A stretch of DNA of 64,000 nt from positions 1 through 64,000 of the IMG/VR virus record IMGVR_UViG_3300020471_000004. One strand, written 5' to 3'. Numbering within the stretch: the stretch's first letter is position 1; every line of letters starts with the position of its first letter. Positions 20,620 to 49,783 of the stretch are shown in pieces. The position numbers were made by a program, and so were the translations under genes. Below the pieces are notes generated by a model, which was given only the letters and a program-made list of their open reading frames with translations, had not been told where the DNA came from and made no database searches.

Positions 20620-22599
20620 TTAGAAGGATTTCATTGCTCTAGAAAGTTTTGATTGGAAGTCAGAAGTTGAAACCGCAGTTGATTGCGACTCCAAAGTTTT
20701 TTCTTTTGGTACAACACGAGGTTGTAAACGTTGCTCTACAGAACTAACAGATTCCTGTCCGTCTTTACGAGCAAAAGAACTAGCAGCAACCATTTCGGCA
20801 ACTTCGTTTTGGAAGTCAGCGGACTTGCTGATAAGTTCCATCGTCTGGTCAACCAACAGCTTGTTGAATGCACCTGCGTTAGCTTCAAACACGTTATCAA
20901 TAAGCTCACGAGCATTATCAATACCTGCAGCCTTCAAGGTACTGGCCAAGCTTGAAATGATTGGGTTAGACTTTCCACGGAACACACCGTTATTCAGTCC
21001 CATGATAGAAGTAGCAAGGGCAGCACCCAGGCGTTCCATCAGTTTAGCATCGCGGTCTTTCTGGGCTTGTTCGTAGCCTGCAATTTTTGCATCCGCTTGT
21101 GCAACGATTTCTTTAGAGATAACCGTTTGCATTGTTTGTTCGTCAAAAGCAATTGACTCGAAACCGAACTGTTTAAGACCTGACTCTACGCCATCGTTAG
21201 CGATTGCTTTTAAGCAAGCTTGGCGGTAAGTAGGTTGATTAAAGATGCCACGTAGATTACCTTCGACATTTGACTCTGATGCAACTGCAACAGGAGTAGC
21301 GCCATGGAAAGCAACCCAACGGTTTTCACCAGCAACAACAGATACATTAGCTAGGCTAACTTGGTCTGCTTGTAAACCGCCTTCGGTAGAAGATGCAACC
21401 GCAGTCATAACGTCAAGAGAAGCAGAAACAGATACAGAGTCAGATTCAAGCTCTTCATCGTCATCGTCATCTTCTTCATCTTCTTCGTCATCTAGACCAT
21501 CAACGTCTTCGTCTTCGTCAGAGTCATCTTCGTCAGAGTCATCTTCGTCTTCGTCAGAGTCATCTTCGTCTTCGTCTTCGTCTTCGTCTTCGTCTTCGTC
21601 AGAAGAAGAGATAACTTCGAAATCATCGTCCAGGTCATCGAACTCGTCATCGTCCAGGTCCGAATCAATGTCGTCAAGGTCGTCAAGGTCGTCATCGTCA
21701 TCTAGATCCATATCCATGTCGTCATCCAACATAATATCATCTAGGTCATCGTCTTCATCCATAAGAAGATCATCGTCCATGTCCATAGAGGCATGTTCAA
21801 GTTCATCTAAAACTTCTGGATCGACAACGGCGGTAGAACAGCTAGGGCACACTGTAATGTCTTCGCTAGAAGAAAGAACGTGCATACCGCATTCTTCTGA
21901 ATCAGCACAAACAAAGTAATGCGCATCAGTTCCGAAACGGTCAGCAGCATCTTGCACTGCACTAGAGTTAGACTCTAATTCCTGCGCTGCAACTTCTTCA
22001 CCGTAGAAAGGACTGTAGTGAACAGAACCGCTAGAGTTAGAAATAAAGCTAACTTGGTTTTCGGTGTCTTCGTAAGCAGAAACAGGAGAATCGCCTGCTA
22101 GAATAGCCAGGTAGTCTTCTTTGGCTTCTTCAAAAGAAGAGGCAACGACAACGATACCTTGCTCGCCTTCAAGCTCTTGAACAAGAGCGCTTTCAGACTC
22201 TAGCTCGTCTTCTAAATCGCGGTCGAAATCTACATCGGTACTGCACGAAGGACAGTTAGATACAGACTCGCAAGCATCTGCGATAATGTGCGTGTTACAT
22301 TCAGAACACATGGTGTAATGAACTGACACTTGGTCTTCTTGGTCGGCACTGCTGGTAACTTCGAGATCAGTATCTAAAACCTTCATTGAGTCTCTGTTAC
22401 CAGACAGAGGATTCAAAAAAGATTTATGCGCACCAGCAACAGTAGCGATAGCAAAAGAACCGTCGGCAGAAGAAAGAACTTCTAGGGACTCTTGTTTAGC
22501 AACCATTGCGTAGTTACGGATAGCTTGTTCTCGGGTACCTGCAGTAACAACAATACCGCCAAAGCTAGGCTGAGTCGGTGATTTTTGTTTTACTGTCAT
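20620..22599 (-). CDS. putative prohead scaffold/core protein
   Basis: 659 aa, very acidic with a D/E tract of about 110 aa, two repeated Cys-containing modules, many S-x-S sites; first gene of the head operon with GAGGAG SD. Confidence 0.65.
   Translation of the reverse strand: MTVKQKSPTQPSFGGIVVTAGTREQAIRNYAMVAKQESLEVLSSADGSFAIATVAGAHKSFLNPLSGNRDSMKVLDTDLEVTSSADQEDQVSVHYTMCSECNTHIIADACESVSNCPSCSTDVDFDRDLEDELESESALVQELEGEQGIVVVASSFEEAKEDYLAILAGDSPVSAYEDTENQVSFISNSSGSVHYSPFYGEEVAAQELESNSSAVQDAADRFGTDAHYFVCADSEECGMHVLSSSEDITVCPSCSTAVVDPEVLDELEHASMDMDDDLLMDEDDDLDDIMLDDDMDMDLDDDDDLDDLDDIDSDLDDDEFDDLDDDFEVISSSDEDEDEDEDEDEDDSDEDEDDSDEDDSDEDEDVDGLDDEEDEEDDDDDEELESDSVSVSASLDVMTAVASSTEGGLQADQVSLANVSVVAGENRWVAFHGATPVAVASESNVEGNLRGIFNQPTYRQACLKAIANDGVESGLKQFGFESIAFDEQTMQTVISKEIVAQADAKIAGYEQAQKDRDAKLMERLGAALATSIMGLNNGVFRGKSNPIISSLASTLKAAGIDNARELIDNVFEANAGAFNKLLVDQTMELISKSADFQNEVAEMVAASSFARKDGQESVSSVEQRLQPRVVPKEKTLESQSTAVSTSDFQSKLSRAMKSF
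21563..21600. repeat. (tcttcg)x6 in-frame microsatellite encoding (ED)n
   Basis: Read directly; part of the larger D/E low-complexity tract at about 21450-21790. Confidence 0.85.
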
Positions 22600-22834: not shown

Positions 22835-22907
22835 GTATTACTGGAAACTAACCGAAATACCTACCAATAAGCACAGCTTTCTGCATAGCAGTATTATTAC
22901 CTGCAGA

Positions 22908-24278
22908 TTACTTTGCATCTAAGTCAAGCGAGTAGTAGTCTACTAGTTTGCCTTTAAGTTCTGCGGATACTCCTGATGAAGGCACATCATAGGAAACAAA
23001 CTTAACGCCTCTACCGTAAGCTTTGGTCACAGAAGCTTTCCACTCATTGTAGCTTTGACCTTTATTCTGGCTAGGGTTATCTAGGCGCGAGCTTTTGCCT
23101 GTATTCTTTGTGTCTGGACTACTGCTTTTTGTGCCTGAACGTTTTTTAGCCTGTTCGACTTTTATTTGGCGACTAGTAGGTGTTTTTTCTATAAGCTTTT
23201 CTGCTTTTCTAAGATCCCTTTGCAAAGGACGTATCTCGGCATTTAAGTCTCTAGCCTGTTGGGCTAATTCTTTTTTCTTTTCCTTGTTATCTGTGTTGTC
23301 CATGCGCTGCTTTATGCGCTCTACTTTTTGCTGCAACTTAACTATGTTCTTATACATTTTATAAGTATCAGGCGCTTTTACTGGAGCCTTAGGCTCCCTA
23401 GTTACTCGTGCTTTGCGTGTCTTAGAAGCAGTTTCATTAGGAGATTTCTTGCGTCCCTCAGGCACTTCTTCACCGTTCATAATACCTGCAATACGGCGTG
23501 CAGCTATACGAGGTCCTGCATAGTACTTGCGCATAGGTCCACCGCTAGCAGGCTGGTGGAATACATGCCAGCCAGGTGCAAGCATACCAGGTGAGCGTTT
23601 CTTGCGTCCCATTTTAGAACCTACGTTGCCTTTACCTCTAGCAGGAGCCGCCGATTCAGATTCAATACTTGATACTGAAATAAACGCTTCGTTGCCTCTA
23701 GAACCGTCACCGCGTGAGCTTCTACCGCGAGAATAGTCTACAAGGTCTTGAACAGCTAAAGGTATAGCACGTACATCTGAACATTCGCGGAAAGCAACGT
23801 GAACATTAGATTTAGTTAGTTCAAAAGAGTAGACACCGTCTTCAAAACCGTCATAGTTTATAGAGTAACCGCTAGGTAGCCGCGCTTGTTTAATAGCTTT
23901 ATAGGCGGCTTGGTTGCCAACGTTTGAATTTGAAGTGCTTTCTCTCTCAAAGTCTTCCTCAAAGCTTAGTGCCTCTGCTTCAAGGTCTGTAATAGACTCT
24001 GAGTAAGGACCGTCAGGGTCAATATCCCATAAACCGTCACTTGCTAGTGCCTCCATTTCCCGTTGTGCGAACAGGCGATTCTTCATGCTAGGGGTATACT
24101 TGGCTTCTTTAGATATGCGGAAAATACTAAATAGACCTGTACGGCTTTTTAATACGTAACGTCCTGGTTGAGCAAAAACTACTCGTGCTTTAGGCTTTAC
24201 TGTAGCAAGAGCCTTTTCAATAGTAGCAGGAATAGGGTGCTTAGAACGTGCGCTTTCTGAAAGTATTTGAATATACAT
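22908..24278 (-). CDS. basic multi-segment protein, tagged putative head cargo
   Basis: MYIQILSESA; internal ERESTS and IESESA sites; Lys/Arg-rich coiled coil. Confidence 0.7.
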   Translation of the reverse strand: MYIQILSESARSKHPIPATIEKALATVKPKARVVFAQPGRYVLKSRTGLFSIFRISKEAKYTPSMKNRLFAQREMEALASDGLWDIDPDGPYSESITDLEAEALSFEEDFERESTSNSNVGNQAAYKAIKQARLPSGYSINYDGFEDGVYSFELTKSNVHVAFRECSDVRAIPLAVQDLVDYSRGRSSRGDGSRGNEAFISVSSIESESAAPARGKGNVGSKMGRKKRSPGMLAPGWHVFHQPASGGPMRKYYAGPRIAARRIAGIMNGEEVPEGRKKSPNETASKTRKARVTREPKAPVKAPDTYKMYKNIVKLQQKVERIKQRMDNTDNKEKKKELAQQARDLNAEIRPLQRDLRKAEKLIEKTPTSRQIKVEQAKKRSGTKSSSPDTKNTGKSSRLDNPSQNKGQSYNEWKASVTKAYGRGVKFVSYDVPSSGVSAELKGKLVDYYSLDLDAK

Positions 24279-24293
24279 AGTTAATCCTTTGGT

Positions 24294-25271
24294 CTATTTA
24301 CTACGCTTAGTGCTTTTAGTGCTTTTAGTGCTTTTAGTACTACGGGTGCTTTTAGTACTACGCTCTTTGCGGGTTTTAGACTTAGGGCTTAAAGCATCAA
24401 TCTGTTTTTGGACTTTTTCTTGTAAAGCTTCCCACGCATCAACTGCCTTATCCATTTCTGCTTCAACCTTGTCATACTCTTTATTGAGTTTGTCCAGCTT
24501 TTGTTGAATTTCTTTTTTCTTAGAGCCTTCAGCGTCTCTGAGTTCGTACTCAAGATCATCAATATCATCGGCTAGGTCAATGCTTTTGTCTTCAAGCTCG
24601 GCGACCTTTTCAAACTCCTTGCTTGACTCAACACTTTGGCGCAATTCGTCTATTTGTTTTCTAGCTTTTTCTTTTTCTTCTTTTTCTTTGTACTTTTGAG
24701 GATTGTTGGCTTTATCGGCTTTCTCAAGTTCCTTGTGTTCAGCTTCAAGCTTCTTATATTTCTTTTCGAGCTTCTTCTTGGTCTTTTTAGCAGCAACTCT
24801 TTCTTCGTCTACTTCTTTTTTGTAATACTCGATTTCTTTTTTAGCGTCAGCCACTTCTCCCTTGGCGTATTCTATTTCACTTTCGTCTCCGTCCTCTTCG
24901 GCCTCTTCAAGCTCTTCTTGGGCATCTTCAAGACGTTCTTGGGCATCTTCTAACCTACGTTGGTTTTTAGTATCACCTTCTAGGGCATCTTCGGCTTCAT
25001 CTAACTCGAAACCAAGGTTTTCCATTTTAAGAGCCACAGAATCCAAGCGCTTTTCAATTGATTTAGCAGACTTATCTTTTGTAGTAGAAGCATTGTCCTT
25101 TTGAGCTTGCTTCTTGGTAGTGTTGTCACGTTCTGCCTTTGGTTTAGCTAAACGTTTGGCATGGCTGCTGTTCGGGTACTTTTTTAGGTATTTCTTTTTC
25201 TCAGAAGAACCTAATTTTGCAAACTGCTCAGCAGACAAGCCTGCACTTTCTGAATTAAGAGTAATAATCAT
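24294..25271 (-). CDS. K/E-rich coiled-coil protein, tagged putative head cargo
   Basis: MIITLNSESA; KKYLKKYPNSSHAK motif; (STK)n tail. Confidence 0.7.
   Translation of the reverse strand: MIITLNSESAGLSAEQFAKLGSSEKKKYLKKYPNSSHAKRLAKPKAERDNTTKKQAQKDNASTTKDKSAKSIEKRLDSVALKMENLGFELDEAEDALEGDTKNQRRLEDAQERLEDAQEELEEAEEDGDESEIEYAKGEVADAKKEIEYYKKEVDEERVAAKKTKKKLEKKYKKLEAEHKELEKADKANNPQKYKEKEEKEKARKQIDELRQSVESSKEFEKVAELEDKSIDLADDIDDLEYELRDAEGSKKKEIQQKLDKLNKEYDKVEAEMDKAVDAWEALQEKVQKQIDALSPKSKTRKERSTKSTRSTKSTKSTKSTKRSK
24307..24360. repeat. 9-nt tandem repeat (ttagtgctt-like, about 6 units) encoding an (ST[K/R])n tail
   Basis: Read directly. Confidence 0.8.
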
Positions 25272-25279
25272 GTTTTTTC

Positions 25280-25753
25280 CTAGATTGTTTCATACAAGCG
25301 TTTAAGACCAGCCATCTTTCCTGGGTAACCTTTACGCTGTAACAAATTAAAAAAGTCTACAGGCTTCATGTTGTGCAAGGGATTACTATCTCTAGCAGTA
25401 CCGCGCGGGTGAATATAGTCTTTGACAAATTCATCAAACTCTATTTCGTACTCTACCATACTGTCAACAAACTCCAAGAACTGTTCCCAAAGTTTATCTT
25501 CGTCAGGAGTATTCAGATCCACAAGTTCAAAGGATTTGACCTCGGCAATAGGTAACGCTCGGGGGTATGCCAGTATACCGTGCCTATAGTTTCGAGAGTC
25601 ACGAATACCTGCAAAGCGTTTATCTTTTGCAGCTTTTTCTGCATCGATAAACTCTACAGGCTGGGGGTTTGTAGGCTGTGCCCCTATAGAATAAGGTCTG
25701 AATTTCAGTCCGTAATAGAACTTTTGGTTACTTAATGAAATTAGAAGTTTCAT
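25280..25753 (-). CDS. DarA C-terminal-like domain protein, tagged putative head cargo
   Basis: YYGLKFRPYSIGAQP...RHGILAYPRALPIAEVKSFELV matches my recollection of the DarA_C (defence against restriction A) consensus; starts MKLLISLSN. Confidence 0.65.
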   Translation of the reverse strand: MKLLISLSNQKFYYGLKFRPYSIGAQPTNPQPVEFIDAEKAAKDKRFAGIRDSRNYRHGILAYPRALPIAEVKSFELVDLNTPDEDKLWEQFLEFVDSMVEYEIEFDEFVKDYIHPRGTARDSNPLHNMKPVDFFNLLQRKGYPGKMAGLKRLYETI

Positions 25754-25760
25754 AGATACC

Positions 25761-27434
25761 TCAAATAAGCTTTTCTATGTTAGCTGGCATTCTTAAACCT
25801 AGGCGTTCATAGAAGTCTGCCAAAATAGCAGGGTCAATATAGTTAGCAATAGCAGTAGATATAGTAAGCTTACCGTTATTAAAATGGCCAAGCTCTTTGG
25901 CTACTTTTTGTAAAGCACCTTTTAACCAAGTCTCTGCGTCTTTGTTAGTTACCTGGCGTTTACGAGTAAATAAAGGACACTTTTCAATAATATCTCTTGC
26001 TAGACGTGTACCTTTAAGAGTACGGAATTTGTGAGCAGTAACCCCTTCAGGTAACATAGACTTCAAATATTTGTTTACAGCATTGGCTGTTATACGTCTG
26101 TTACCGAAAGTAAATAGAGGGTCTTTGCGCTTCTTGCCTTCGCTAAGTTGGTCAAGCAGTTCTATAATCAATTTGTTTGTGACAGAATTAGGTTTAAGCA
26201 CATGCTTTTGGACCTGTGCTTTCTTGGCTTCGTACTTTATTTCTCGGTTCTGACCTTTCTTGTAATAGTGACCTGATTGCAGTACAGTCAAACCGTATGT
26301 GGTCTTATCACCTGTCTTGCCTTCACGGGTACCTATACGCGCACTGGTTTGGTACATAACTTCTATAACAAGACACAGCAAGCCTTCTTTGGTTGATATG
26401 CCTTCTGATTTTAGTTTCTGCAACCAACGTCTTCTTACACCAGGCGCTACTTTTTCAAATTCTTCTACAATCTTAAACTTTTTGCTACGTTGCTTAGAGT
26501 TCCACCTTTCGGTGTATACCTTTAGATAGTTTTCAGCAGCAGGGGCCTTATATTCTAAAACATAGGCGTTATCTTTTTTAGGATCGTAGTTAGGATTCAT
26601 GCGAACATCGCCTGCTATACCTTTATTGCTTAACAACAAACCTTTTGAGGTATAGTAAGAAAGAGTATCGTCAATGTAACCAACAAACTGTTCAGGTAGA
26701 TTGTGATGGCGTATGCCTGCATCTTTGATAGCATCAATTACTTCACGGATGTCCAGATACGGCTTACCTGATTGGCGTACATAGTTTACAACAAAGTTTT
26801 TCCATGCTTTATTTACTTCTAGGCTAGCTTTTCGGAATTCAACATAGACAGGATTGTCTTTGTGTTTCTTGCGGAGTTCTTGACTTAGGTGGATAGTGCC
26901 GTCACCACCTAACTTGGTGCTAAGTTTAGAAACCTTTTTAAGTAAACTATCTTGGTCACTTACTTCTAGTTCAAACAGACTTGAAAGAGCTACATCGTTT
27001 AAGTCACTTACTTTGGTCTTTAGAACGTTAATCGCATTCTGCCTAGAAGTTTCTTTAGGAGACGTAGCAATTGTGTAGAACTTTTTGATTATGTCTAGTC
27101 CTGACCTAGATATAAGAGTTTCGTTCTCTATTTTAGCACGTACCTTTTTGTCTCTTACCTGCTTGGCTACTTCATACGCAGAACCTAGAAAGTCTTCGTC
27201 CTCTTCGTGTAAGGTATACCCTTTTAAGAAAAGGCTTGTCATTTCATCGTAAGCTTTTAGGTTAAACTTGTAGTGGGCCATAAACTCACGCCCTTGCTTA
27301 ACCCACTCACGGATGTCGCCAGCTAGGTTATGAGGGAATTTGTATTCAGGACTATCTGAATATGCGACAAGCAGCACCACTTTTGTAAATGCCGTTGCTA
27401 TGTCAGAATTAATTTTTGATAAAGATACTAACAT
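25761..27434 (-). CDS. type IB DNA topoisomerase with long N-terminal extension
   Basis: Catalytic pentad R (SARIG), K (YEAKK), R (AHKFRT), H (ELGH), Y (ANYIDP). Start MLVSLSK at 27434 inferred from the TAATG overlap with the upstream stop. Confidence 0.88.
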   Translation of the reverse strand: MLVSLSKINSDIATAFTKVVLLVAYSDSPEYKFPHNLAGDIREWVKQGREFMAHYKFNLKAYDEMTSLFLKGYTLHEEDEDFLGSAYEVAKQVRDKKVRAKIENETLISRSGLDIIKKFYTIATSPKETSRQNAINVLKTKVSDLNDVALSSLFELEVSDQDSLLKKVSKLSTKLGGDGTIHLSQELRKKHKDNPVYVEFRKASLEVNKAWKNFVVNYVRQSGKPYLDIREVIDAIKDAGIRHHNLPEQFVGYIDDTLSYYTSKGLLLSNKGIAGDVRMNPNYDPKKDNAYVLEYKAPAAENYLKVYTERWNSKQRSKKFKIVEEFEKVAPGVRRRWLQKLKSEGISTKEGLLCLVIEVMYQTSARIGTREGKTGDKTTYGLTVLQSGHYYKKGQNREIKYEAKKAQVQKHVLKPNSVTNKLIIELLDQLSEGKKRKDPLFTFGNRRITANAVNKYLKSMLPEGVTAHKFRTLKGTRLARDIIEKCPLFTRKRQVTNKDAETWLKGALQKVAKELGHFNNGKLTISTAIANYIDPAILADFYERLGLRMPANIEKLI

Positions 27435-27874
27435 TATTCTACCATATGGGCCGGAGCTTGCTTTAACCAAGCTATTGCTTCGTCTTGGCTATCAAAAGAT
27501 TTAAAATTGATACCTGACTCGTTAAATACACGCTCTATTTGGATTCTTGAATTCTTAGACATTTGAGGATCGAAAATAACAGCAACAAAACAAGGATAAT
27601 CACGAGTGCTATTTAACCATTTACGAAAGCGAACGAATTCTTTAAATTTTGTTTCGGCATCTGTACTGGACACAGTGCCTTTATCCGCGTATATGCAGTA
27701 CTTCCAATTTGTATCTCTGCTTTGCGATATAACCTTATTTATTCCATCGATTATACCACAAGCATTATCTATTCCAATAGTTCTTAGAAGTACAAGGGTA
27801 ACTATGCTAGATAGTTCCCTGTAACACACAGCGTAAGTCCCTTTAGGGCAGCTTATTGCTGCATCGTCTTGCAT
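27434..27874 (-). CDS. STAS/SpoIIAA-like protein
   Basis: Alpha/beta pattern with VAVIF and C-terminal FDSQDEAIAWL. Confidence 0.55.
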   Translation of the reverse strand: MQDDAAISCPKGTYAVCYRELSSIVTLVLLRTIGIDNACGIIDGINKVISQSRDTNWKYCIYADKGTVSSTDAETKFKEFVRFRKWLNSTRDYPCFVAVIFDPQMSKNSRIQIERVFNESGINFKSFDSQDEAIAWLKQAPAHMVE

Positions 27875-27880
27875 AGTGCC

Positions 27881-28819
27881 TCACATTGATTTGTAGCTAC
27901 CTGAATACTGACCGTCAACTAGGTATTGGTTAACAAAATATTTTTCAGCTATTTCCCAACCTACAGGGGTAGTAAATCCTCTAACAGATTGACCGTGAAC
28001 CATAGCTTCTACCAGTATAGCAAAAGCTTCATCCCACCAAGGGTTAGCATACCCAGGGTGGTTGAATTGGTCTTTGTGTAGGCGCTTGGCAGCTACTTGC
28101 TTCTTGAACTTTATTACATCGCTATTCTTCAACACATTCTTTATAGCATAGTGCGCAAGTTCGTGAGTTAGAACCTGTGCAATACCGTCTACAGAAAGGC
28201 TTCCGAATATACGAGTTAACTGACCTGGGTTCAGTATAATATAAATATCATACGTACCTCGAGTACGGTTCATGCTGTGAGCAATACAGCTACCTATCTC
28301 GTTAGAAATGCCTAAGCTGATTGGGTACTTGAACTTTATTTTAGTACCTAATCGACCTAGAGCAATTTCTATGTTTCGTCTAATGCTACCGCTTGCAGGC
28401 AATACAGTACCTACGAATATAGAAGTAGGTTTCTGTATAAACTGAAAGTTAACTTTAGCTGAGCCTGCAATAGTAGGTGCTACCTTTTTAGGTGACGGAG
28501 CAGTCACCTTAGGTTTAGGTTTTATATCAGATGCAGATTTAAAAGTTTCATCAAAAGATGAACTCCCTGCCAGCACGTCTTTACCTTGTATTTTGCCTAA
28601 ATAAGGCTTAGACGTGGTTACCAGCTCTCTTGCTTTCTGCTCACTAATAGGAACTAAAGCAGCTACTTGGTTATCAACCAAAATAAACTGGTCTTTGTTC
28701 TTGACCAGACCGTATACGGCCCTGCCTTCTAAATTAATTCGAGTAGTAGCACCGTCAACACTGATAGGGTTGCCTAAATACCTATACCAACGCCCAGCAT
28801 GAAGTACATCAATTTTCAT
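27881..28819 (-). CDS. zincin-like metallopeptidase with N-terminal shared beta domain
   Basis: VLTHELAHY (HExxH) plus downstream DEAFA third-ligand motif. Confidence 0.7.
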   Translation of the reverse strand: MKIDVLHAGRWYRYLGNPISVDGATTRINLEGRAVYGLVKNKDQFILVDNQVAALVPISEQKARELVTTSKPYLGKIQGKDVLAGSSSFDETFKSASDIKPKPKVTAPSPKKVAPTIAGSAKVNFQFIQKPTSIFVGTVLPASGSIRRNIEIALGRLGTKIKFKYPISLGISNEIGSCIAHSMNRTRGTYDIYIILNPGQLTRIFGSLSVDGIAQVLTHELAHYAIKNVLKNSDVIKFKKQVAAKRLHKDQFNHPGYANPWWDEAFAILVEAMVHGQSVRGFTTPVGWEIAEKYFVNQYLVDGQYSGSYKSM

Positions 28820-28834
28820 GGCTTTTCCTTAATC

Positions 28835-30763
28835 TTACGACCAGATACTTACGATACCTGACTGTCTAAAACCTTCTTTGTCAACAACTACTCGGAACTC
28901 TGCTGAACGAGAGATAGGCGAGTAGTAACCAAGTATTTCGCCACTTCCGCCTAAGCCAGTTACAGTTACAGACCCTTCTTCCTCAGCATCGATCCAGTCA
29001 GGCAGATTGTCTTCTTCTTTCAAGGTAGAAGGTAACGAATCAATAAGTTTTTTGATCTTGGCGTAACCTAGACCTTTAACACTGGAGCCTGCACCTTCTT
29101 CTGCTTCATTCATTATCTTTCTACCTAAGGTAGGAGTAATTACAGAGTCCAGCAGTTTAAAAGTATTTTTCGGCAATACATTAGTATAACCTCTTGCTAG
29201 AGAGACCCCTGACTTTAAGCTTATTGAATCAACCTTTAAGCTCTCTACAAAAGCAGTTGCTTTTTTGATTCCAGCAGGAGTAAAGTTAAACTTGTTACCA
29301 GCAACGTAAATGCCTTTTAACCCTTTAGCAGCACCTGGTTTAGGCAAAATTACGTAAGGGCTATCTCCGTCGATATTTACTTTCCAAGTATAGCGCTCTA
29401 CCTCTCTGCTATTGTAATAAGATACATTACCTGTGCCGAAAACAGTAGAAAGAAGTTTTATGGTATCTTCCTCAGAAGTGCTACCTCTTTGCTTAGAGGT
29501 AGCCAGAGGCTTTTTTGGAGAGTTTATTATTCCCTCTTCTCTTAAAGTAACTAGTAGTTTTTTAACAGAGTTTACTAGGCCTTTATCAAACACTCTTATT
29601 AAAGAAGGGCTAGAGTCATTTAATAAAAGAGCCGCTACTACCTGAGCGTACGGGTCATAGTTTTCTAGATCGAACAGTATGCTCTTGGCCCGTTTTTGAG
29701 TAAGGCCGGTGTCAGTCATTAGTTTTGTAAGACCTTTTTCTACAGAAGTACGACTACCGTTAGTAAGCATAGCTCTTAAGGGCTTAACGTCAGCAGGGCT
29801 TGCATCGTTGCCTCGAGAATCAGTAAGACTAACAGTATCATCACCATCCAGGTATTCGTAAACGTCACTTATTTTAGAATTTGTTTTGTCTGCTATAACA
29901 ATAGCTCTTAAGGTTTCTTTGACTGACTCTTGGTTAAAAGTAAGTCCCTTACCGATAGAAGCCTCTAATACCTTCTGGTACTTGGGACTTAGTTTCTTTG
30001 CTACTAGACCCGCGACAGCCCCTACCTTTACAGGCGCAGAACCAGGCTTTTGTGTTCGCATATTAGGAGTAATAGTAGCACCAGAAAGCTTTTGTAAAGC
30101 AGCGTTAGGCTTGATACTTTTGATGTTTGACATGATTGCAGAGAAGGTTTTGGCACTAGCCAGCTTTTTGACATTGGCAACCATCTTCTTACCGGCAGCA
30201 GAAGCAGCGTACTTTTCTAACGCTGCGGTATCTTTGGTTTTTAGAGCACCGATTAGGTAATCGATACCCTTGGTGTTTAATTGTTTTTCTTTAGAGTAGT
30301 CTTCTAGCTTAGACAAGATAGAAACACCTTTTGATCCGAAAAGGATCTTGGCATTTTCTTGTTGCTTTTTAGAAGCCGATTCAGACTCTAGTCCGTCTTC
30401 AAGGCTTGCAGAAGCAGAAGCTTTTACTTCCATCATAAACTTAGAACCTGGCCCTCCGACCGGTTTAACTCCACCTACTTTTAAACCTGCATCTTTCAAA
30501 GCTGCCTTAAAAGAACGTGAATAGTTTTTCTCGTTCTGGAAGTCGGCACTCATAGTTTTAGGATGGAAAGCAGATCGAACAACTGCGCCTTTTTCACCAG
30601 GCGATACACTAAACATAGCAGTAGGTATGCCTGCATCTTTCAAAGCAGCACGTACTTGTTTACCAATACGGCCTGCTTCGGCTTTTGTGATAGTATTGGA
30701 AGCTTTTTTAACCGAGCCGGAAAGAGCCGGCATGTCTTGGGTGTTAGAAACATCAATCTTCAT
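28835..30763 (-). CDS. large Lys/Ala/Ser-rich protein, putative head cargo
   Basis: MKIDVS..ALSGS; internal KASASASLEDGLESESAS. Confidence 0.7.
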   Translation of the reverse strand: MKIDVSNTQDMPALSGSVKKASNTITKAEAGRIGKQVRAALKDAGIPTAMFSVSPGEKGAVVRSAFHPKTMSADFQNEKNYSRSFKAALKDAGLKVGGVKPVGGPGSKFMMEVKASASASLEDGLESESASKKQQENAKILFGSKGVSILSKLEDYSKEKQLNTKGIDYLIGALKTKDTAALEKYAASAAGKKMVANVKKLASAKTFSAIMSNIKSIKPNAALQKLSGATITPNMRTQKPGSAPVKVGAVAGLVAKKLSPKYQKVLEASIGKGLTFNQESVKETLRAIVIADKTNSKISDVYEYLDGDDTVSLTDSRGNDASPADVKPLRAMLTNGSRTSVEKGLTKLMTDTGLTQKRAKSILFDLENYDPYAQVVAALLLNDSSPSLIRVFDKGLVNSVKKLLVTLREEGIINSPKKPLATSKQRGSTSEEDTIKLLSTVFGTGNVSYYNSREVERYTWKVNIDGDSPYVILPKPGAAKGLKGIYVAGNKFNFTPAGIKKATAFVESLKVDSISLKSGVSLARGYTNVLPKNTFKLLDSVITPTLGRKIMNEAEEGAGSSVKGLGYAKIKKLIDSLPSTLKEEDNLPDWIDAEEEGSVTVTGLGGSGEILGYYSPISRSAEFRVVVDKEGFRQSGIVSIWS

Positions 30764-30800
30764 AGTTTTATTTCCGTTGTTTATCTAGTTACTTTGTATA

Positions 30801-30829
30801 AGTATAGCAGAATTTTGCTATTATTTATA
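30801..30829 (-). promoter_or_regulatory. candidate promoter region (TATAAATA; palindrome; extended -10 TGcTATACT)
   Basis: Only sizeable gap in the cargo block; minus strand TATAAATA-atagcaaaattcTGcTATACT. Confidence 0.4.
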
Positions 30830-30862
30830 GACCGACTTTTGTACCTTAATGTTAAAGATAGG

Positions 30863-31411
30863 TTAACTCTTGTTTCGCGCTACCTTTAGTAAGGCTTTGG
30901 CAGATTGCTCCAACATTTTCAGTCGGTCAGCCTGTGTCAAGCCTAGGTGTTTGTTTTTAGAAAAACTAGCCTGCCAAGAAGCTAGAAAACTATTTGTAAG
31001 GTCTTCTTGGGCTTCTGATAGACGAAGTTTTTTATCTTGCTCAGCTTTGGCAGATTCTATGCCTGCTTTAAAGAAAGCAAGTATTGAATTCTTTCCTCTG
31101 GAAGATAGATAAGTATCTATGATTTCAAATAAATACTCGAAATCTTCACCCATCTCAAAGTAACGGTCTAATACAGTTTCGTTACGGTCAAGGTATTCTG
31201 AAATTTTAGGTACAGCAGTACGTAACTGGCGCATATTTGTAATGCGTAGCGTAGAGATAATTTCCTGTAGTCCTAATAAGAAGTTGCTTTCGTAAGCAGG
31301 AGTAAACCGTTTACCGCTATACATCATCAAGCTCATTATATTACACAGCTTGGCAACTTTAGGCTTTTCGAACAAGGAACTTATTGAACGCTTAGTTAAA
31401 TCAATTTTCAT
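30863..31411 (-). CDS. hypothetical helical protein, putative head cargo
   Basis: MKIDLTKRSISS; GAGG SD. Confidence 0.65.
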   Translation of the reverse strand: MKIDLTKRSISSLFEKPKVAKLCNIMSLMMYSGKRFTPAYESNFLLGLQEIISTLRITNMRQLRTAVPKISEYLDRNETVLDRYFEMGEDFEYLFEIIDTYLSSRGKNSILAFFKAGIESAKAEQDKKLRLSEAQEDLTNSFLASWQASFSKNKHLGLTQADRLKMLEQSAKALLKVARNKS

Positions 31412-31413
31412 AG

Positions 31414-32217
31414 TTACCTCATTACTGCCATGACTTGGTTATGGTTACTATGGTTTGAAACATAGGCAGGATCTTCTACAGCGCTGTTTTCAAAACCAGT
31501 TATTTGGTGCACATACCTGAAAGCGATCTGGTTTGCATCGTTTACATAAGTAGGCTTTTGTAGAACAGTATGACTACATACATTACGTAAATTATCTTTA
31601 TATACCGTATGTCCACAAATGCTACAGGTGTAAGCTTGATACCACATACCAATACTGAATGTATTTAGGTCCTCTGTTAGAATGCGGTTAGCAAGAACAG
31701 GGTCTTTGGTTCGGTCAAAAGCAAGTAACTGAATAATACGAGCATGGTTGCCACGGAACTGAGGTAACGACTTCATGTATACGTCAAGAATAACACCTTT
31801 AGCTTTGGTAATATCCTTGTTGTCATGCTCTTGGTGAGTAGGTTTTCCTTTCCACGTTTTGTATGCCAGCATACCTAAATCAGGACGAAAGCGTAGTGCC
31901 TCTTGAGTAGACAAACAATCACCGTTGGTGTTAGGTACGTCAGTTATAACACTAGGCACAGGCACCATCACGTAGTCACGAAGATTAGGGCTTATCTGAT
32001 AATGTTCAGATGCCATTGGTAACCAAGTGTTTGCATCTATTACCATGCTTTCTGAGGCGCCTGTTGCACTAGGCTTAAAAGTGATTTCGTTTGATTTACC
32101 AATGTCTTTTAACTCGATAGCTTTGTGGCGTACGTCACGTTTGGTAACATCGAAACTAGAGCTTTCAAAGCTGTTCTGTTCATTGGGAATAATAATGTCT
32201 TTTAAATCAAGTTTCAT
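31414..32217 (-). CDS. prohead maturation protease (HK97/assemblin superfamily) with Zn-ribbon insert
   Basis: NTNGD, GKPTHQEH (His), KGVILD, FSIGM (Ser), CSICG..CSH, FENSAVEDPA. Confidence 0.75.
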   Translation of the reverse strand: MKLDLKDIIIPNEQNSFESSSFDVTKRDVRHKAIELKDIGKSNEITFKPSATGASESMVIDANTWLPMASEHYQISPNLRDYVMVPVPSVITDVPNTNGDCLSTQEALRFRPDLGMLAYKTWKGKPTHQEHDNKDITKAKGVILDVYMKSLPQFRGNHARIIQLLAFDRTKDPVLANRILTEDLNTFSIGMWYQAYTCSICGHTVYKDNLRNVCSHTVLQKPTYVNDANQIAFRYVHQITGFENSAVEDPAYVSNHSNHNQVMAVMR

Positions 32218-32219
32218 AA

Positions 32220-33461
32220 TTAACCTACTCGGGTTACTTCTATAACTAACTGGTTATTAGCGTTACGACCTGCGTTAACGTTAATATCTTGAGTAGAAAC
32301 TCTGCCACCGCGCGAAGCACCTTTGTTTACGAAAGTGAAAGAACCTACTTCACCTTTCTCGAAATCAGGAGTTGGTTTTGACGTAAGAGAAGACAGACTG
32401 TTTGTACTAATAGCTTTGGCTACTTTCTTAGCTATAGCTGCACTAGTATTGTATTCAACAGAGAATGAAGTATTGCCTATACTATAAGAAGAAGGCAATC
32501 TTTTTGAATTGGTTATCTTTAGGTATAGCTGACCTTTGCCTTTTGAAAATCTGCCTGCACTTTGGCCTTTTCTGCTAGGTCTAGGCTTACGAGTAGTAGG
32601 ATCTCTGGTAATAGTTTCTTTACGAGCAGGCACATCGTAATCACCTAGTTCTACGTCACCGCTAGTTTGGGCATTACGTATAAGGTCTAGTGAGAAACGA
32701 GTAGGTTGCTTAGGTTCAAAAATTGAAGTGATAGCAAGAGGAGTCTGTTTGCCTGACTTGAGCATACTAGCAGCCTGTTTAGGTGTAACTCGGATCATGC
32801 GACCATCACCAAACGTGCCACCACGGCTCTTGAATGCAGTACCTTGCTTCCAGCCGTCTGTAGAAAAGGCAGGAGATGCAAAATCAATACCGTATTTAGA
32901 TTTGATAGAACTAACAAAGCCAAGTTTTTTGCTTTCAAGCAACGACACTAGGTCTTTTATCAAATCATTCAGGTTGAAAGGATAGCGCTGACCAGGTTTA
33001 AGCGTCTTCAAGAATTCTTCGGTTGCTGCCAAGTTAGAAAGAATTTGGACATTCTTTTTGGTCATGCTGGTACGAGTGTTTGCACCGAACAAGGCAATAG
33101 CCGCCAACTTAGCCAGATCCGCAGAGTTGTCTTGGGCAACCTTCTTGGGGCTAGGTTTGCGTGTAGGCTTTTTAGTACCAGTAGCTGCATCTTCCGATAA
33201 GATTTTATGGTCACGTTTAAGTTGGTTAAACTTGTTTCGCGTTATCTTGAACTTCCAGTACTTGTTTAGCTCCTCGTCAAAGTCAAACAGGAATATACCT
33301 TTAGGTGAATTAGAAAGGTAGAAAATATCGCCACGTCTTAGAGCCAGTTCGTGAGTAGCATCTTCTATTTCAATTTTCTTTTTAGCTTTCATCTGAATAG
33401 ACCCTTTAATAGGCGCTTTAACTTTAGTTGCAGATGAACTTTCTAGTAGATTTATTTTCAT
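32220..33461 (-). CDS. basic protein, tagged putative head cargo
   Basis: MKINLLESSSA; Lys-rich. Confidence 0.7.
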   Translation of the reverse strand: MKINLLESSSATKVKAPIKGSIQMKAKKKIEIEDATHELALRRGDIFYLSNSPKGIFLFDFDEELNKYWKFKITRNKFNQLKRDHKILSEDAATGTKKPTRKPSPKKVAQDNSADLAKLAAIALFGANTRTSMTKKNVQILSNLAATEEFLKTLKPGQRYPFNLNDLIKDLVSLLESKKLGFVSSIKSKYGIDFASPAFSTDGWKQGTAFKSRGGTFGDGRMIRVTPKQAASMLKSGKQTPLAITSIFEPKQPTRFSLDLIRNAQTSGDVELGDYDVPARKETITRDPTTRKPRPSRKGQSAGRFSKGKGQLYLKITNSKRLPSSYSIGNTSFSVEYNTSAAIAKKVAKAISTNSLSSLTSKPTPDFEKGEVGSFTFVNKGASRGGRVSTQDINVNAGRNANNQLVIEVTRVG

Positions 33462-34828
33462 AACATGTTCCTGTTAATCGTATGCTTTACCCAAGTGCAA
33501 CATTCTGAATAAGTTTGCCTAATAGGGTTAATTAAAGTAAGTTGGTTAGAGTTTACTACAGTATACGGTTCTTTTTCGCTGCGACCTGTCCGGAAAGCAC
33601 TCTCAGTAAAACCGTCATAAAGTTTCGCTACCCAGCTACGTGTGTTTGCTCCTGTACCCTTGATTTTAGGGTCAGATTCAATACGACCAATATGGTCACC
33701 GCCATACATTATATCGTACTTGGTTCTTTCGGCATCAGTCAGCTTACGTTGAGAAGGACATACTCTAAAACTAATACGGGGCCTAGTGGCCGATTCAGAA
33801 TCGAGGCTATCTAGTTCACTAGGTATATCTATGTATTCTTCTTTGTCATCCTCAAGAAACTTATCAATATCTTCTTTACTAGGAACAAACTTCTCCTGTT
33901 CCATATCGTGACGTATCTCCAGTAGACCTATCTTTTTGGACAAAGTATCAAAGTCTATGCCTGTTAACCAATCCATGTAGTGTTTGACAAAACGTTCCAT
34001 GGTAGGGTTTGTTTCAGGGTCAGACAAGTCTTCTTCGTATTCTTCATCCTCTTCTTCAGGTTCTTCTGCACTAAGGCTTGACCATCTAGAAAGAGATACA
34101 CGATCTAACCAAGCATCAAATTCCTGCTTGTACTCGTCTTGGGGAGTAAGTAGGCGTGATACACTGTTAGACTCTAGTTTTTGCTTGGAATACTCTTGAA
34201 GGTCTTTGTAGTTAGAAGGGCCTAAGAAAGCACTTAGCAATACTTTGCTTACGCTTTTGCCAATCTTTTTCCAGCGACCTTGTCCTAAAGTATTCTCATT
34301 GACAGCATCTAACAGCTTTAACGCAGAGCGACCGCCTCTGCGGTCACTGTCTTGTGCATCTTTGGCACTATATTTACCTTTAAGAATCTTACCGGCAAAG
34401 CCGTTGAACTCTCTACGACCTTGTGGTGAAAACTTGCTGTCCATAACCTGGACAACTTTCGTAAAGCTATCTTTTATTTTCTTAAAGTTTTCTTTCATGT
34501 CCATGCGTACAGCAGGAGCGTTTACTTCAAGACGGTCAGTTTCTTCCTGTACAAGAGCTGCTTCTTGGGCTCTAATCTCACGAGACTTAGGTAACTGCTC
34601 TTTCTTAACAGGTTTCGCAGGTTTCGCTTTAGGTCGAGCAGCTTTACGAGTGGTCTTGTTAGAAGGTTTAGCTTTAGGCTTTTTAGGCTCATTGATTCTA
34701 AGCTTACCTGATTTAACACCTTTAGCGTATTTGCTATTAGGGTGCTTTTCTATGTAAGCTTTTCTTCTAGCTGGACCTGCCTTTTTCCACCAGTTAGATT
34801 CTTGTGCAGATAAGGATATAAGTGTCAT
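33458..34828 (-). CDS. multi-segment protein, tagged putative head cargo
   Basis: Start MTLISLSA at 34828 from the ATGA overlap with the upstream stop; WWKK..YIEKHPNSKYAK; internal LESNS, SSLSA, LDSESA. Confidence 0.7.
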   Translation of the reverse strand: MTLISLSAQESNWWKKAGPARRKAYIEKHPNSKYAKGVKSGKLRINEPKKPKAKPSNKTTRKAARPKAKPAKPVKKEQLPKSREIRAQEAALVQEETDRLEVNAPAVRMDMKENFKKIKDSFTKVVQVMDSKFSPQGRREFNGFAGKILKGKYSAKDAQDSDRRGGRSALKLLDAVNENTLGQGRWKKIGKSVSKVLLSAFLGPSNYKDLQEYSKQKLESNSVSRLLTPQDEYKQEFDAWLDRVSLSRWSSLSAEEPEEEDEEYEEDLSDPETNPTMERFVKHYMDWLTGIDFDTLSKKIGLLEIRHDMEQEKFVPSKEDIDKFLEDDKEEYIDIPSELDSLDSESATRPRISFRVCPSQRKLTDAERTKYDIMYGGDHIGRIESDPKIKGTGANTRSWVAKLYDGFTESAFRTGRSEKEPYTVVNSNQLTLINPIRQTYSECCTWVKHTINRNML

Positions 34829-49781: not shown

Positions 49782-49783
49782 AA

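What the first reader, a model, noticed from the sequence alone, without database searches (positions are those of the whole stretch)
22908..34828. Several tagged proteins look like polyproteins with internal copies of the site between segments
Seen: 22908 has ILSESA, then FERESTS, then ISVSSIESESA, each preceded by acidic residues and followed by a compositionally new segment. 28835 has ALSGS and LEDGLESESAS. 33458 has ISLSA, LESNS, WSSLSA, and SLDSESA before a distinct C-terminal beta domain. Inference: one gene yields several small basic products inside the head, with acidic spacers discarded.
Basis: partly seen in the sequence, partly recalled or inferred. Interest (0 to 1): 0.65.

Follow-up and report, generated by a model that had tools for sequence, protein, structure and literature searches.

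The report
Cleavable multi-module head proteins, jumbo phage
Three head-module genes of an uncultured 233-kb jumbo phage each encode several protein modules joined by short Ser-x-Ser linkers that look like cutting sites of the phage's own head protease, a known kind of virion maturation with a recognition motif not reported before for this phage group.

Summary
The window is the first 64 kb of a 232,692-bp jumbo myophage of the Lu11/PaBG/NCTB/Y3 group. About 20 ORFs start with a short leader, M-x(0-4)-[LI]-[IV]-S-x-S, followed by A, K, N, S or G.

A matrix trained only on these leaders finds internal copies 7-fold enriched in the head module (p 2e-5). They occur in A (22908-24278), G (28835-30763), K (33458-34828) and four to six times in an acidic scaffold-like protein (20620-22599).

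- The internal sites are conserved while their flanks drift.
- AlphaFold puts the G and K sites in low-confidence coils between folded parts.
- The sites lie at module borders. G's part after LESES|A is a stand-alone tagged gene in Y3, Yoloswag, Alexandra and IMG/VR relatives. A 90%-identical relative lacks G's first module. K's C-terminal domain is a separate gene in PaBG-like phages.

FERESTS is not supported. No cleavage has been shown. "Small basic products, acidic spacers discarded" is only partly right: predicted products are 3.7-55 kDa, and K's acidic piece is a conserved, helical segment.

Best reading: prohead-protease processing of T4/phiKZ/SPN3US type, but with a small-x-small (S/A-x-S/A) motif instead of x-x-Glu. 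I file it as a new variant of a known kind.

The parts
31414..32217 (-). Head maturation (prohead) protease, 267 aa. Its own N-terminus carries a conserved S-x-S|F site (NSFESSS|FDV). Invariant H131 and S188 are candidate catalytic residues, and there is a conserved CxxC...CxH insertion.
   Evidence: phrog_18299 'head maturation protease', E 1.5e-92. Relatives are annotated as prohead protease. Family alignment and invariant columns. No Pfam or PDB sequence hit. Language-model neighbours include S78/S77/S80 clusters.
22908..24278 (-). Protein A, 456 aa. Layout: leader 1-9 (ILSES|A), conserved N-domain 10-~105, lineage-specific insert ~111-203, double site ISVS|S + IESES|A (200-210), then a basic C-terminal part 210-456 (27.6 kDa, pI 10.3, net +32).
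23649..23681 (-). A residues 200-210: internal double site ISVS|S and IESES|A.
   Evidence: IESES|AAP is kept in all 6 relatives that cover the region, while the flanks have indels. F[IL]S[VT]SS is kept in the NCTB-type relatives that carry an insert. PWM 8.6 and 10.3 bits.
23931..23942 (-). A residues 113-116 (ESTS, inside 'FERESTS'): a doubtful site. It coincides with the start of the 93-aa insert that close relatives lack.
   Evidence: PWM 2.2 bits. Absent from all relatives.
28835..30763 (-). Protein G, 642 aa. Layout: leader 1-17 (MKIDV...ALSGS|V), module 1 residues 18-117 (basic, alpha-beta-beta x2), linker ASASASLEDGLESES|A (118-130), module 2 residues 130-642 (55 kDa, pI 9.6).
30374..30412 (-). 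G residues 118-130: linker with internal site LESES|A.
   Evidence: PWM 13.7 bits. pLDDT <50 for residues 116-128, between module 1 and helix 132-158. Aligns with the N-terminal leader site of stand-alone genes in Yoloswag gp169, Y3 gp174, Alexandra gp252, L007 11423-11968, P0006 and P0011.
33458..34828 (-). Protein K, 456 aa counted from ATG 34828 (the longest ORF starts at GTG 34855). In ORF numbering: leader MTLISLS|A (10-16), basic + helical part 17-231 (24 kDa, pI 10.3), 232-262, acidic helical part 263-355 (net -25), C-terminal domain 356-465 (12.6 kDa, pI 9.6).
34163..34177 (-). K residues 227-231: site LESNS|V.
   Evidence: P3 and P1 Ser invariant in 6 homologues (39-94% id), with flanks at 44% identity and adjacent indels. 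Lies in a pLDDT<50 coil.
34067..34084 (-). K residues 258-263: site SSLS|A, opening the acidic segment.
   Evidence: S-x-S in 5 of 6 homologues; the sixth has A-L-A. Lies in a pLDDT<50 coil.
33788..33808 (-). K residues 350-356: site LDSES|A, directly before the C-terminal domain.
   Evidence: Both Ser invariant in 6 homologues. Y3 gp145 has SES|A and JA29 gp136 has SES|S at the same place. In PaBG, L009, L011 and L012-18 the domain is a separate 113-119-aa gene starting 2-4 residues after this point.
20620..22599 (-). Scaffold-like acidic protein, 659 aa, with a poly-D/E core and two CxxC...CxxC motifs. It has repeated sites ELESES|A (137), ELESNS|S (212), ELESDS|V (388), TLESQS|T (640), plus LISKS|A (593) and FISNS|S (189).
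   Evidence: The PHROG label 'ATPase' has no Pfam or NCBIfam support. The scaffold role is inferred from position, composition and repeated sites.
18747..19826 (-). Major capsid protein. The probable maturation site is ...MKALSS|NGEINAH (about residue 33), before the conserved body.
   Evidence: phrog_2522 alignment starts at residue 30. Y3 has ELALSES|TGELNAY and JA29 has ERILSES|TGEVNAI at the same place. The window's own site lacks Ser at P3 and scores negative with the PWM.
24294..25271 (-). Protein B, 325 aa. Leader MIITLNSES|A, then a KKYLKKYPNSSHAKR motif and a charged coiled-coil-like body. No internal site found.
32220..33461 (-). Protein J, 413 aa. Leader MKINLLESSS|A, then a basic body (pI 10.2). 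No internal site found.
25280..25753 (-). Tagged DarA_C-domain protein, 157 aa (MKLLISLS|N).
   Evidence: Pfam PF18789, E 1.7e-7. Leader conserved in NCTB and L007.
25761..27434 (-). Tagged type IB topoisomerase-like protein. The probable start is ATG 27434, giving MLVSLS|K.
   Evidence: Pfam Topoisom_I, E 1.1e-19. Leaders MLITLS|R (NCTB) and MLISLS|R (L007).

Best explanation
Proteins A, G and K are most likely cargo or core proteins of the prohead, each made as one chain of two to four modules.

Proposed mechanism:
1. A 6-17-residue N-terminal leader (M-x-[LI]-[IV]-S-x-S) directs the chain into the assembling prohead. This role is inferred by analogy with the T4 capsid-targeting sequence.
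2. After assembly, the phage's head maturation protease (31414-32217) cuts after the second small residue of S/A-x-S/A.
3. These cuts remove the leaders, trim the major capsid protein, break up the acidic scaffold-like protein (4-6 sites) and separate the modules of A, G and K at the internal copies of the same site.

Predicted pieces:
- A: about 12 kDa, possibly a further 9.5 kDa, and 27.6 kDa (basic).
- G: 11.6 + 55 kDa (both basic).
- K: 24 (basic) + 3.7 + 11 (very acidic) + 12.6 kDa (basic).

Shown here: the motif, its enrichment, its conservation, its position in predicted linkers (G and K only), and its coincidence with borders of modules that are separate genes, or absent, in relatives.

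Inferred: that the sites are cut, that the prohead protease does it, where exactly the bond is broken, and which pieces remain with the DNA.
For: 1. A protease gene lies in the module.
2. About 20 ORFs carry the leader. The loose pattern occurs 36 times at N-termini against 12.4 expected. With the matrix (>=9 bits) 21 ORFs score at the N-terminus, 16 of them the training leaders themselves and 5 further ORFs, against 2.0 expected at the internal rate.
3. Selection acts on the protein, not the DNA: Ser codons at both positions use both the AGY and TCN families.
4. A matrix trained on leaders only finds internal sites enriched 7.3-fold in the head module (p 2e-5). A, G and K hold 5 against 0.51 in shuffles. 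LES.S occurs 11 times against 2.45 expected, 7 of them in the head module against 0.15 expected.
5. The same motif repeats in the acidic scaffold-like protein, sits before the conserved body of the capsid protein in Y3 and JA29, and sits at the protease's own N-terminus in all 9 family members.
6. Conservation: P3 and P1 are invariant or nearly so, while P2 and the flanks vary. One homologue changes both Ser to Ala together.
7. Module borders:
- G 120-241 aligns to the very N-terminus, leader included, of stand-alone genes in five relatives.
- P0006 (88-90% id) lacks G residues 1-113 and has a leader joined directly to the site.
- K 356-465 is a separate gene in PaBG-type phages.
- A's insert is bounded by the double site.
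8. AlphaFold places K's three internal sites and G's internal site in pLDDT<50 coils between confident elements.
9. In the relative PaBG, several virion proteins were found in multiple gel bands, which the authors read as multiple proteolysis (PMC7412058).
10. Multi-site cutting of head proteins by a prohead protease is established in SPN3US (PMC10052503).
Against: - There is no direct evidence of cleavage for this phage or any close relative, and no virion proteome for it.
- The scissile bond is guessed.
- The protease has no Pfam, NCBIfam or PDB sequence match, and hhalign against T4 gp21 is not significant.
- The window's own capsid protein has ALSS, which does not fit the matrix.
- The motif is short. 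16 matrix hits lie in proteins outside the head module, some surely by chance.
- Both structure models rest on 5-6 sequences (mean pLDDT 58 and 67), and low pLDDT may partly reflect that. Protein A was not modelled.
- An internal site created by fusing a tagged gene behind another module (as in G) could be a relic that is no longer cut.
Confidence: 0.6

Rival explanations
1. Propeptide model, as in SPN3US and phiKZ. Everything N-terminal of the last site is a disposable assembly or targeting propeptide that is chopped up and expelled. Only the C-terminal piece of each protein (A 210-456, G 130-642, K 356-465) is a mature head component. One gene then gives one product, not several.
For: - In SPN3US, 13 of 14 mapped cuts remove N-terminal propeptides of 20-254 residues, and these are themselves cut several times (PMC10052503).
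- A's N-domain (10-~105) is the part shared by paralogues and relatives, while the rest is mosaic, as expected of an assembly domain.
- K sits just upstream of the protease and has helical and very acidic parts like a core or scaffold protein.
Against: - G's module 1 is missing from a 90%-identical relative whose module 2 carries its own leader, so module 1 is not needed to deliver module 2.
- G module 1 and K 17-231 are strongly basic (pI 9.8 and 10.3), unlike typical expelled scaffold pieces.
- K 17-231 and the acidic part are as well conserved as the C-terminal domain.
Confidence: 0.22
2. The internal S-x-S stretches are not cut. They are flexible Ser-rich linkers, relics of former N-terminal leaders kept after gene fusion, or sites of another modification. 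A, G and K act as full-length multi-domain proteins.
For: - G's internal site is exactly where a leader stood in the unfused relatives, so it could be a fossil.
- The motif is short, and 16 hits occur outside the head module.
- No cleavage data exist.
Against: - Both Ser are invariant across 39-94% identity in the K family at three sites, while neighbouring residues and lengths change. One homologue has a paired S-to-A change.
- The same motif recurs 4-6 times in the scaffold-like protein and at the protease's own N-terminus.
- PaBG virion proteins show multiple bands.
Confidence: 0.12
3. The sites are cut by another enzyme or at another time. A candidate is the tagged zincin-like protein F (27881-28819, HELAH motif), acting inside the head or after ejection into the host, as proposed for metallopeptidase domains of polyvalent proteins.
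For: - F carries an HExxH motif, and its homologue is the one gene kept between protease and scaffold in Y3 and JA29.
- KMPT-N domains, which are metallopeptidase-associated, follow the leader in 13917-14603 and 40585-42285.
- Iyer et al. propose that such peptidases release domains of packaged multi-domain proteins (PMC5512222).
Against: - The motif is shared with the capsid protein of relatives, the scaffold-like protein and the prohead protease's own leader. This is the usual substrate set of a prohead protease.
- F has no Pfam peptidase hit.
Confidence: 0.06

Closest known systems
T4 prohead core processing by gp21 (internal proteins IPI-III and Alt with a short capsid-targeting leader; gp22, gp67, gp68 and gp23 cut at L/I-x-E). 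Cited from established knowledge and the review listed (PMC9026906).
   Same: - A short N-terminal leader ends in the protease motif.
- The same motif occurs in scaffold, capsid protein and internal proteins.
- The protease gene sits among core and scaffold genes next to the capsid gene.
- The scaffold carries several sites.
   Different: - The motif here has small residues (Ser/Ala) at P3 and P1 instead of Glu at P1.
- The protease shows no detectable sequence relation to gp21.
- Several substrates here are multi-module chains with sites between modules, whereas T4 internal proteins lose only the leader.
phiKZ / 201phi2-1 / SPN3US head maturation (gp175 / gp245 proteases; S/A/G-x-E or A-x-E motif; PMC10052503, PMC5694885)
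   Same: - A jumbo myophage with many head-internal or ejection proteins.
- Several proteins are cut at more than one site.
- Paralogous families share N-terminal regions.
   Different: - P1 is Glu there and Ser/Ala here.
- The phage lineage is different (Lu11/PaBG/NCTB/Y3 group, PMC7412058).
- Leaders here can be as short as 6 residues.
- Here the pieces on both sides of a site exist as separate genes in relatives, which argues for several products rather than one product plus a propeptide.
Polyvalent proteins of phages and conjugative elements (Iyer et al. 2017, PMC5512222)
   Same: - Several functional units in one chain that is packaged and delivered with the DNA.
- Proposed proteolytic release of the units.
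- Neighbouring genes carry domains from that repertoire (DarA_C, KMPT-N).
   Different: - A, G and K contain no domain of that catalogue (Pfam scans).
- Release here would use short linear sites read by the capsid protease, not an in-chain metallopeptidase domain.
Herpesvirus assemblin (cuts V/L-x-A|S) and bacterial signal peptidase I (A-x-A rule). Cited from established knowledge.
   Same: A preference for small residues at P3 and/or P1. Assemblin shares its fold with phage prohead proteases.
   Different: This is only a resemblance in specificity. No sequence or fold relation was tested successfully here.

Membership tests
Prohead-protease substrates with N-terminal targeting leader (T4 / phiKZ / SPN3US type) | A head maturation protease is encoded in the head gene module. 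| tested here: met
   31414-32217 matches phrog_18299, E 1.5e-92. Relatives are annotated as prohead protease. It lies between K/J and the scaffold-like and capsid genes.
Prohead-protease substrates with N-terminal targeting leader (T4 / phiKZ / SPN3US type) | One short motif is shared by the leaders of internal proteins, the scaffold and the capsid protein. | tested here: met
   Leaders; scaffold-like protein; capsid protein in Y3 and JA29. The window's own capsid protein fits only loosely.
Prohead-protease substrates with N-terminal targeting leader (T4 / phiKZ / SPN3US type) | Cleavage C-terminal to Glu (L/I-x-E, S/A/G-x-E, A-x-E). | tested here: not met
   The conserved positions are Ser (or Ala) at P3 and P1. 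Glu appears only at variable P2/P4.
Prohead-protease substrates with N-terminal targeting leader (T4 / phiKZ / SPN3US type) | Cleavage demonstrated in virions or in vitro. | not testable with these tools
   The only indirect data are multiple gel bands for PaBG virion proteins (PMC7412058).
Phage prohead serine proteases (MEROPS S77 / S78 / S80) | Sequence match to the family models. | tested here: not met
   No Pfam hit at E<=5 for 9 family members. No NCBIfam hit. No PDB sequence hit. hhalign against T4 gp21 gives probability 0.6%.
Phage prohead serine proteases (MEROPS S77 / S78 / S80) | Assemblin-like fold with a His/Ser catalytic pair. | not tested
Invariant H131 and S188 are candidates. 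Language-model neighbours include S78, S77 and S80 clusters at 0.89-0.92, which is a lead only.
Polyvalent proteins (Iyer et al. 2017) | Two to fifteen catalogued effector domains in one polypeptide, usually with an MPTase or similar domain. | tested here: not met
   A, G and K have no Pfam domain. DarA_C, KMPT-N and a topoisomerase IB-like domain are in separate neighbouring genes.
Viral polyprotein in the broad sense | Units on both sides of a protease site are independent, meaning they occur as separate genes or are dispensable. | tested here: met
   G module 2 is a stand-alone tagged gene in 5 or more relatives, and module 1 is absent in P0006. The K C-terminal domain is a stand-alone gene in PaBG-type phages. 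A's insert is absent in P0013-15.

The most novel reading that the evidence does not exclude
The leader plus S-x-S site works as a general, portable packaging-and-release cassette. One leader carries a train of unrelated cargo modules into the capsid, and the capsid protease uncouples them. Because the junctions are short linear sites, modules can be added, lost, fused or split between strains without loss of delivery. Three such changes are seen here: G with or without module 1 at 90% identity, K fused or split, and A with or without its insert. This would make the site a junction for rapid modular evolution of the set of proteins ejected into the host, which here includes a tagged type IB topoisomerase-like enzyme and a DarA_C protein. 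It would also define a prohead protease specificity class (small-x-small) distinct from the Glu-specific T4/phiKZ enzymes.
Probability: 0.35. Interest if true: 0.65.

Novelty: new variant of a known kind. Interest (0 to 1): 0.55.

Why it matters
- It would give the first cleavage rule for the head protease of the Lu11/PaBG/NCTB/Y3 group of jumbo phages. For this group only "multiple bands" have been reported.
- With that rule, the mature virion proteome of these phages, including about 20 leader-bearing proteins here, can be predicted from sequence and tested by mass spectrometry.
- It points to a short leader that could be used to load foreign proteins into these capsids, as was done with the T4 leader.
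- It shows gene fusion and fission happening exactly at protease sites. That is direct comparative evidence that one gene can stand for several virion components, which matters for annotation and for counting head proteins.

Tried and rejected
- Megablast of the region against isolate phages: no match. Only protein-level relatives exist.
- Pfam, PHROGs and NCBIfam on A, G, J, H and B: nothing informative.
- PDB sequence search with the protease: only chance hits to zinc-ribbon regions.
- hhalign of the protease family against T4 gp21: not significant. Pfam at E<=5 on 9 proteases: only zinc-finger noise.
- Foldseek of the G(1-260) model against PDB: best E 0.03 to designed or S6-like alpha/beta proteins, no functional lead.
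- Foldseek of the K model against BFVD: only the NCTB orthologue.
- tblastn of G module 1 and of A's insert against isolate phages, the own genome and all fetched loci: no stand-alone copies found.
- The extra 107-aa tagged gene in the 250-kb relative is not G module 1.
- hhalign of the K family against the genes upstream of the stand-alone domain gene in L009 and PaBG: weak, collinear, not significant. The shared layout was seen by eye only.
- A DNA-level explanation of the leader (a conserved initiation-region element): rejected because codons vary synonymously.
- A signal-peptide reading of the leader: rejected as too short and lacking a hydrophobic core of the needed length (inference).
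- The Dickeya jumbo-phage paper holds no virion proteomics.
- Not used: the large profile search, the read tools and the complex prediction. The claim does not rest on them.

Full report
**What the window is.** The window is the first 64 kb of a single 232,692-bp contig, an IMG/VR virus record judged 93% complete. Nucleotide search against isolate phages finds nothing. At protein level the nearest isolate is Phage NCTB (head protease 76% identical). Next come the Erwinia jumbo phages Y3, Yoloswag and Alexandra and Dickeya JA29 at 45-48%. These phages, with Pseudomonas phages PaBG and Lu11, were grouped as the "Lupandier group" (PMC7412058).

All genes from 18.7 to 36 kb lie on the minus strand. 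In the order they are read, which runs from high to low coordinates, they are:
- glycosyltransferase
- K (33458-34855)
- J (32220-33461)
- head maturation protease (31414-32217, phrog_18299, E 1.5e-92)
- H, G (28835-30763) and F (27881-28819)
- a small gene
- a type IB topoisomerase-like gene
- a DarA_C gene
- B and A (22908-24278)
- an acidic 659-aa protein (20620-22599)
- a virion protein
- the major capsid protein (18747-19826)

**The observation.** The "tag" is real. Listing all 268 ORFs shows about 20 that begin with M-x(0-4)-[LI]-[IV]-S-x-S followed by A, K, N, S or G. Examples are MLISLSA, MLISLSK, MLISESA, MKLLISLSN and MYIQILSESA. A looser pattern occurs 36 times at N-termini against 12.4 expected. 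The Ser codons at both positions come from both codon families and the Leu codons vary, so selection acts on the peptide, not on the DNA. The same leaders stand on the orthologues in NCTB, Y3, JA29, PaBG and IMG/VR relatives.

**Are the internal copies more than chance?** I built a position matrix (P5 to P2') from 16 N-terminal leaders only and scanned the whole proteome.
- Internal hits of 9 bits or more: 8 in the 4293 residues of the head-module ORFs (20620-34855), against 16 in 62,508 residues elsewhere. That is a 7.3-fold higher density (Poisson p 2e-5).
- A, G and K together hold 5, against 0.51 in composition-preserving shuffles (0 of 1000 reach 5).
- Site scores: A IESES|A 10.3, A ISVS|S 8.6, G LESES|A 13.7, K LESNS|V 10.3, K SSLS|A 9.0, K LDSES|A 12.6.
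- Two quoted sites are weak. FERESTS scores 2.2 bits and ALSGS 5.5 bits.
- The exact word LES.S occurs 11 times in the proteome against 2.45 expected. Seven of these are in the head module against 0.15 expected.

**An internal control.** The 659-aa protein next to the capsid genes has a poly-D/E core. It carries ELESES|A, ELESNS|S, ELESDS|V and TLESQS|T plus two further matrix hits. By position, composition and repeated sites it looks like the scaffold or core protein, the classical multi-site substrate of a prohead protease. This is an inference. Its PHROG label "ATPase" has no other support.

The protease's own N-terminus ends in an S-x-S-type site before a conserved F/G in all nine family members aligned. 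In Y3 and JA29 the capsid protein has LSES|TGE(L/V)NA just before the conserved body. The window's capsid protein has ALSS|NGEINA at that place, which fits only loosely.

**Conservation.**
- K has five full-length homologues at 39-94% identity. At K231 and K355 both Ser are invariant, while P2, P1' and the flanks vary and indels abut the sites. At K262 five of six keep S-x-S and the sixth has A-L-A, a paired change to the other small residue.
- In the A family, IESES|AAP is kept in all six relatives that cover the region. F[IL]S[VT]SS is kept in those that carry an insert. FERESTS has no counterpart anywhere.
- In the G family, LESES|A is invariant apart from one Ala at P3.

**The sites sit at module borders.**
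- **G.** Residues 120-241 align with the very N-terminus of stand-alone genes in Yoloswag (gp169), Y3 (gp174), Alexandra (gp252) and an IMG/VR relative (L007 11423-11968). G's internal S-x-S|A falls on the leader site of those genes. A relative 88-90% identical (P0006, from a 250-kb contig) lacks G residues 1-113 altogether. It starts with its own MKIDI... leader joined to the same site. G is therefore leader + module 1 + site + a protein that is independent and tagged elsewhere.
- **K.** The C-terminal domain (356-465) is a separate 113-119-aa gene directly upstream of the protease in PaBG, L009, L011 and L012-18. That gene starts two to four residues after K's LDSES|A. In Y3 and JA29 the domain is fused as in K, with SES|A or SES|S kept at the junction. 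The gene upstream of the separate domain gene in PaBG has the same leader, the same KxYLxxYPxSxH motif, an acidic run and an SLS|S site. It looks like K's first 355 residues, but profile comparison is not significant.
- **A.** Close relatives (92-98% identical in the shared parts) lack residues ~111-203, and NCTB and L007 paralogues lack or replace them. The insert ends at the double site.

**Structure.**
- AlphaFold on the six-sequence K alignment gives mean pLDDT 57.7. It models confident helices at 83-214 and 277-329 (numbering from the ATG) and pLDDT<50 coils at 216-273 and 329-369. All three internal sites fall in those coils.
- The model of G 1-260 (pLDDT 66.6) shows a disordered leader (1-22), a compact alpha-beta-beta x2 module (27-114), a pLDDT<50 linker (116-128) holding the site, and helices from 132.
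- The alignments are shallow, so the low confidence is only partly informative. Fold searches gave no functional lead. Protein A was not modelled.

**What the products would be**.
- A: 12.0 kDa (pI 5.9), possibly 9.5 kDa (pI 6.8), and 27.6 kDa (pI 10.3, net +32).
- G: 11.6 kDa (pI 9.8) and 55.1 kDa (pI 9.6).
- K: 24.2 kDa (pI 10.3), 3.7 kDa, 11.1 kDa (pI 4.05, net -25) and 12.6 kDa (pI 9.6).

"Several small basic products with acidic spacers discarded" is therefore only roughly right. One product is 55 kDa and A's first pieces are not basic. The only long acidic stretch, in K, is conserved and predicted helical. It may neutralise the basic parts before DNA enters, or act as a core element. Its fate is unknown.

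**Mechanism proposed.** The leader targets the chain to the prohead core, by analogy with the T4 capsid-targeting sequence. The protease then cuts after the second small residue of S/A-x-S/A. These cuts remove leaders, mature the capsid protein, fragment the scaffold-like protein and separate the modules of A, G and K. The basic pieces would stay with the DNA and probably enter the host.

Shown here: the motif, its enrichment and conservation, its linker position in G and K, and the independence of the modules. Inferred: cleavage itself, the enzyme, the exact bond, and retention or loss of the pieces.

Rivals are listed separately in the report: a propeptide model in which only the last piece survives; uncut relic linkers; and cutting by the tagged HExxH protein F, as proposed for polyvalent proteins (PMC5512222).

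**Comparison with what is known.** Prohead-protease processing of internal and scaffold proteins, short targeting leaders and multi-site cutting are established for T4 and for phiKZ, 201phi2-1 and SPN3US. In SPN3US the motif is A-x-E and N-terminal propeptides of 20-254 residues are cut several times (PMC10052503). The present case works like these but fails one defining feature, Glu at P1. Its protease also has no detectable sequence tie to gp21 or to Pfam S77/S78/S80; language-model neighbours point that way only as a lead.

For this phage group, the papers the library searches returned report only that PaBG virion proteins appear in multiple bands, with no motif. I therefore rate the finding as a new variant of a known kind.

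**Limits.** There is no proteomic or biochemical evidence. The motif is short and the homologue sets are small (5-7 sequences). The ORF set was called by a simple greedy rule. The protease fold was not predicted. 

Noticed in passing
window 25761-27434 (-): A type IB topoisomerase-like protein (Pfam Topoisom_I, E 1e-19; C-terminal ...ANYIDP motif) carries the head leader MLVSLS|K when read from ATG 27434, which overlaps the upstream stop by one base. The leader is kept in NCTB (MLITLS|R) and L007 (MLISLS|R). This suggests a virion-packaged topoisomerase.
   Followed up: partly
window 25280-25753 (-): A small protein with a DarA_C domain (PF18789, E 1.7e-7) and the leader MKLLISLS|N. In phage P1, DarA is a processed head protein that protects against restriction.
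   Followed up: no
window 27881-28819 (-): Protein F has a WYRYLG-type N-terminus resembling the KMPT-N domain and a C-terminal HELAH (HExxH) motif. Its homologue is the only gene between protease and scaffold-like gene in Y3 and JA29, whereas this phage has 8 genes there and NCTB 7.
   Followed up: partly
window 13917-14603 (-) and 40585-42285 (-): Both proteins have the leader (MLISLS|A, MLISES|A) followed at once by a Pfam KMPT-N domain (E 5e-9 and 9e-12). Homologues in Y3 and JA29 have the same layout.
   Followed up: no
window 20620-22599 (-): An acidic 659-aa protein with a run of more than 100 mostly Asp/Glu residues and two CxxC...CxxC motifs. PHROGs calls it 'ATPase' but nothing supports that. 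It looks like a scaffold.
   Followed up: partly
window 34700-34790 (K), 25150-25200 (B); G000:C1 125559-126314 (+); L010 8184-9575; L009 7123-8607: A shared motif, [KR]-x-Y-[LI]-x-x-[HYF]-P-x-S-[KS]-[HY], follows the leader by 10-50 residues in K, B, a third tagged ORF outside the window, and the PaBG and L009 proteins upstream of the protease. It may be the real core-binding element.
   Followed up: no
G000:C1 110694-111239, 113060-113509, 125559-126314, 126292-126759 (+), outside the window: Four ORFs on the other strand, far from the structural genes, carry strong leaders (MQLIISVS|S, MQMIISLS|S, MLISLS|K, MKAQISLS|S). They are candidate packaged proteins encoded among early or middle genes.
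   Followed up: no
window 31414-32217 (-), residues 196-216: The protease family has an invariant C198-x2-C201 ... C214-x-H216 cluster, a zinc-ribbon-like insertion that I do not know from T4 or HK97 prohead proteases (from memory, not checked).
   Followed up: no
L023 2215-2538; L001 11011-11334: A 107-aa tagged gene (MKIQLLSVS|N...) lies between J and the protease in the 250-kb close relative and in NCTB, but is absent from this genome. Small tagged cargo genes are gained and lost.
   Followed up: partly
window 34828-34855 (-): The longest ORF of K starts at GTG 34855 and overlaps the glycosyltransferase gene. ATG 34828 gives the leader MTLISLS|A and is the likely start, although the 94%-identical database homologue P0001 was called with the long form.
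   Followed up: partly
window 46517-52269 (-): Four neighbouring paralogous genes of 335-402 aa with similar N-termini (MGFTIEKN, MGFTTKRE, MGFSVERN, MSLSIERN). Y3 annotates genes at the matching place as tail sheath.
   Followed up: no
window 42295-46173 (-) and G000:C1 75997-81801 (-): Two very large proteins (1292 and 1934 aa) have matrix hits at residues 33 (LVSLS|V) and 18 (LESSS|A). They may have longer N-terminal propeptides.
   Followed up: no
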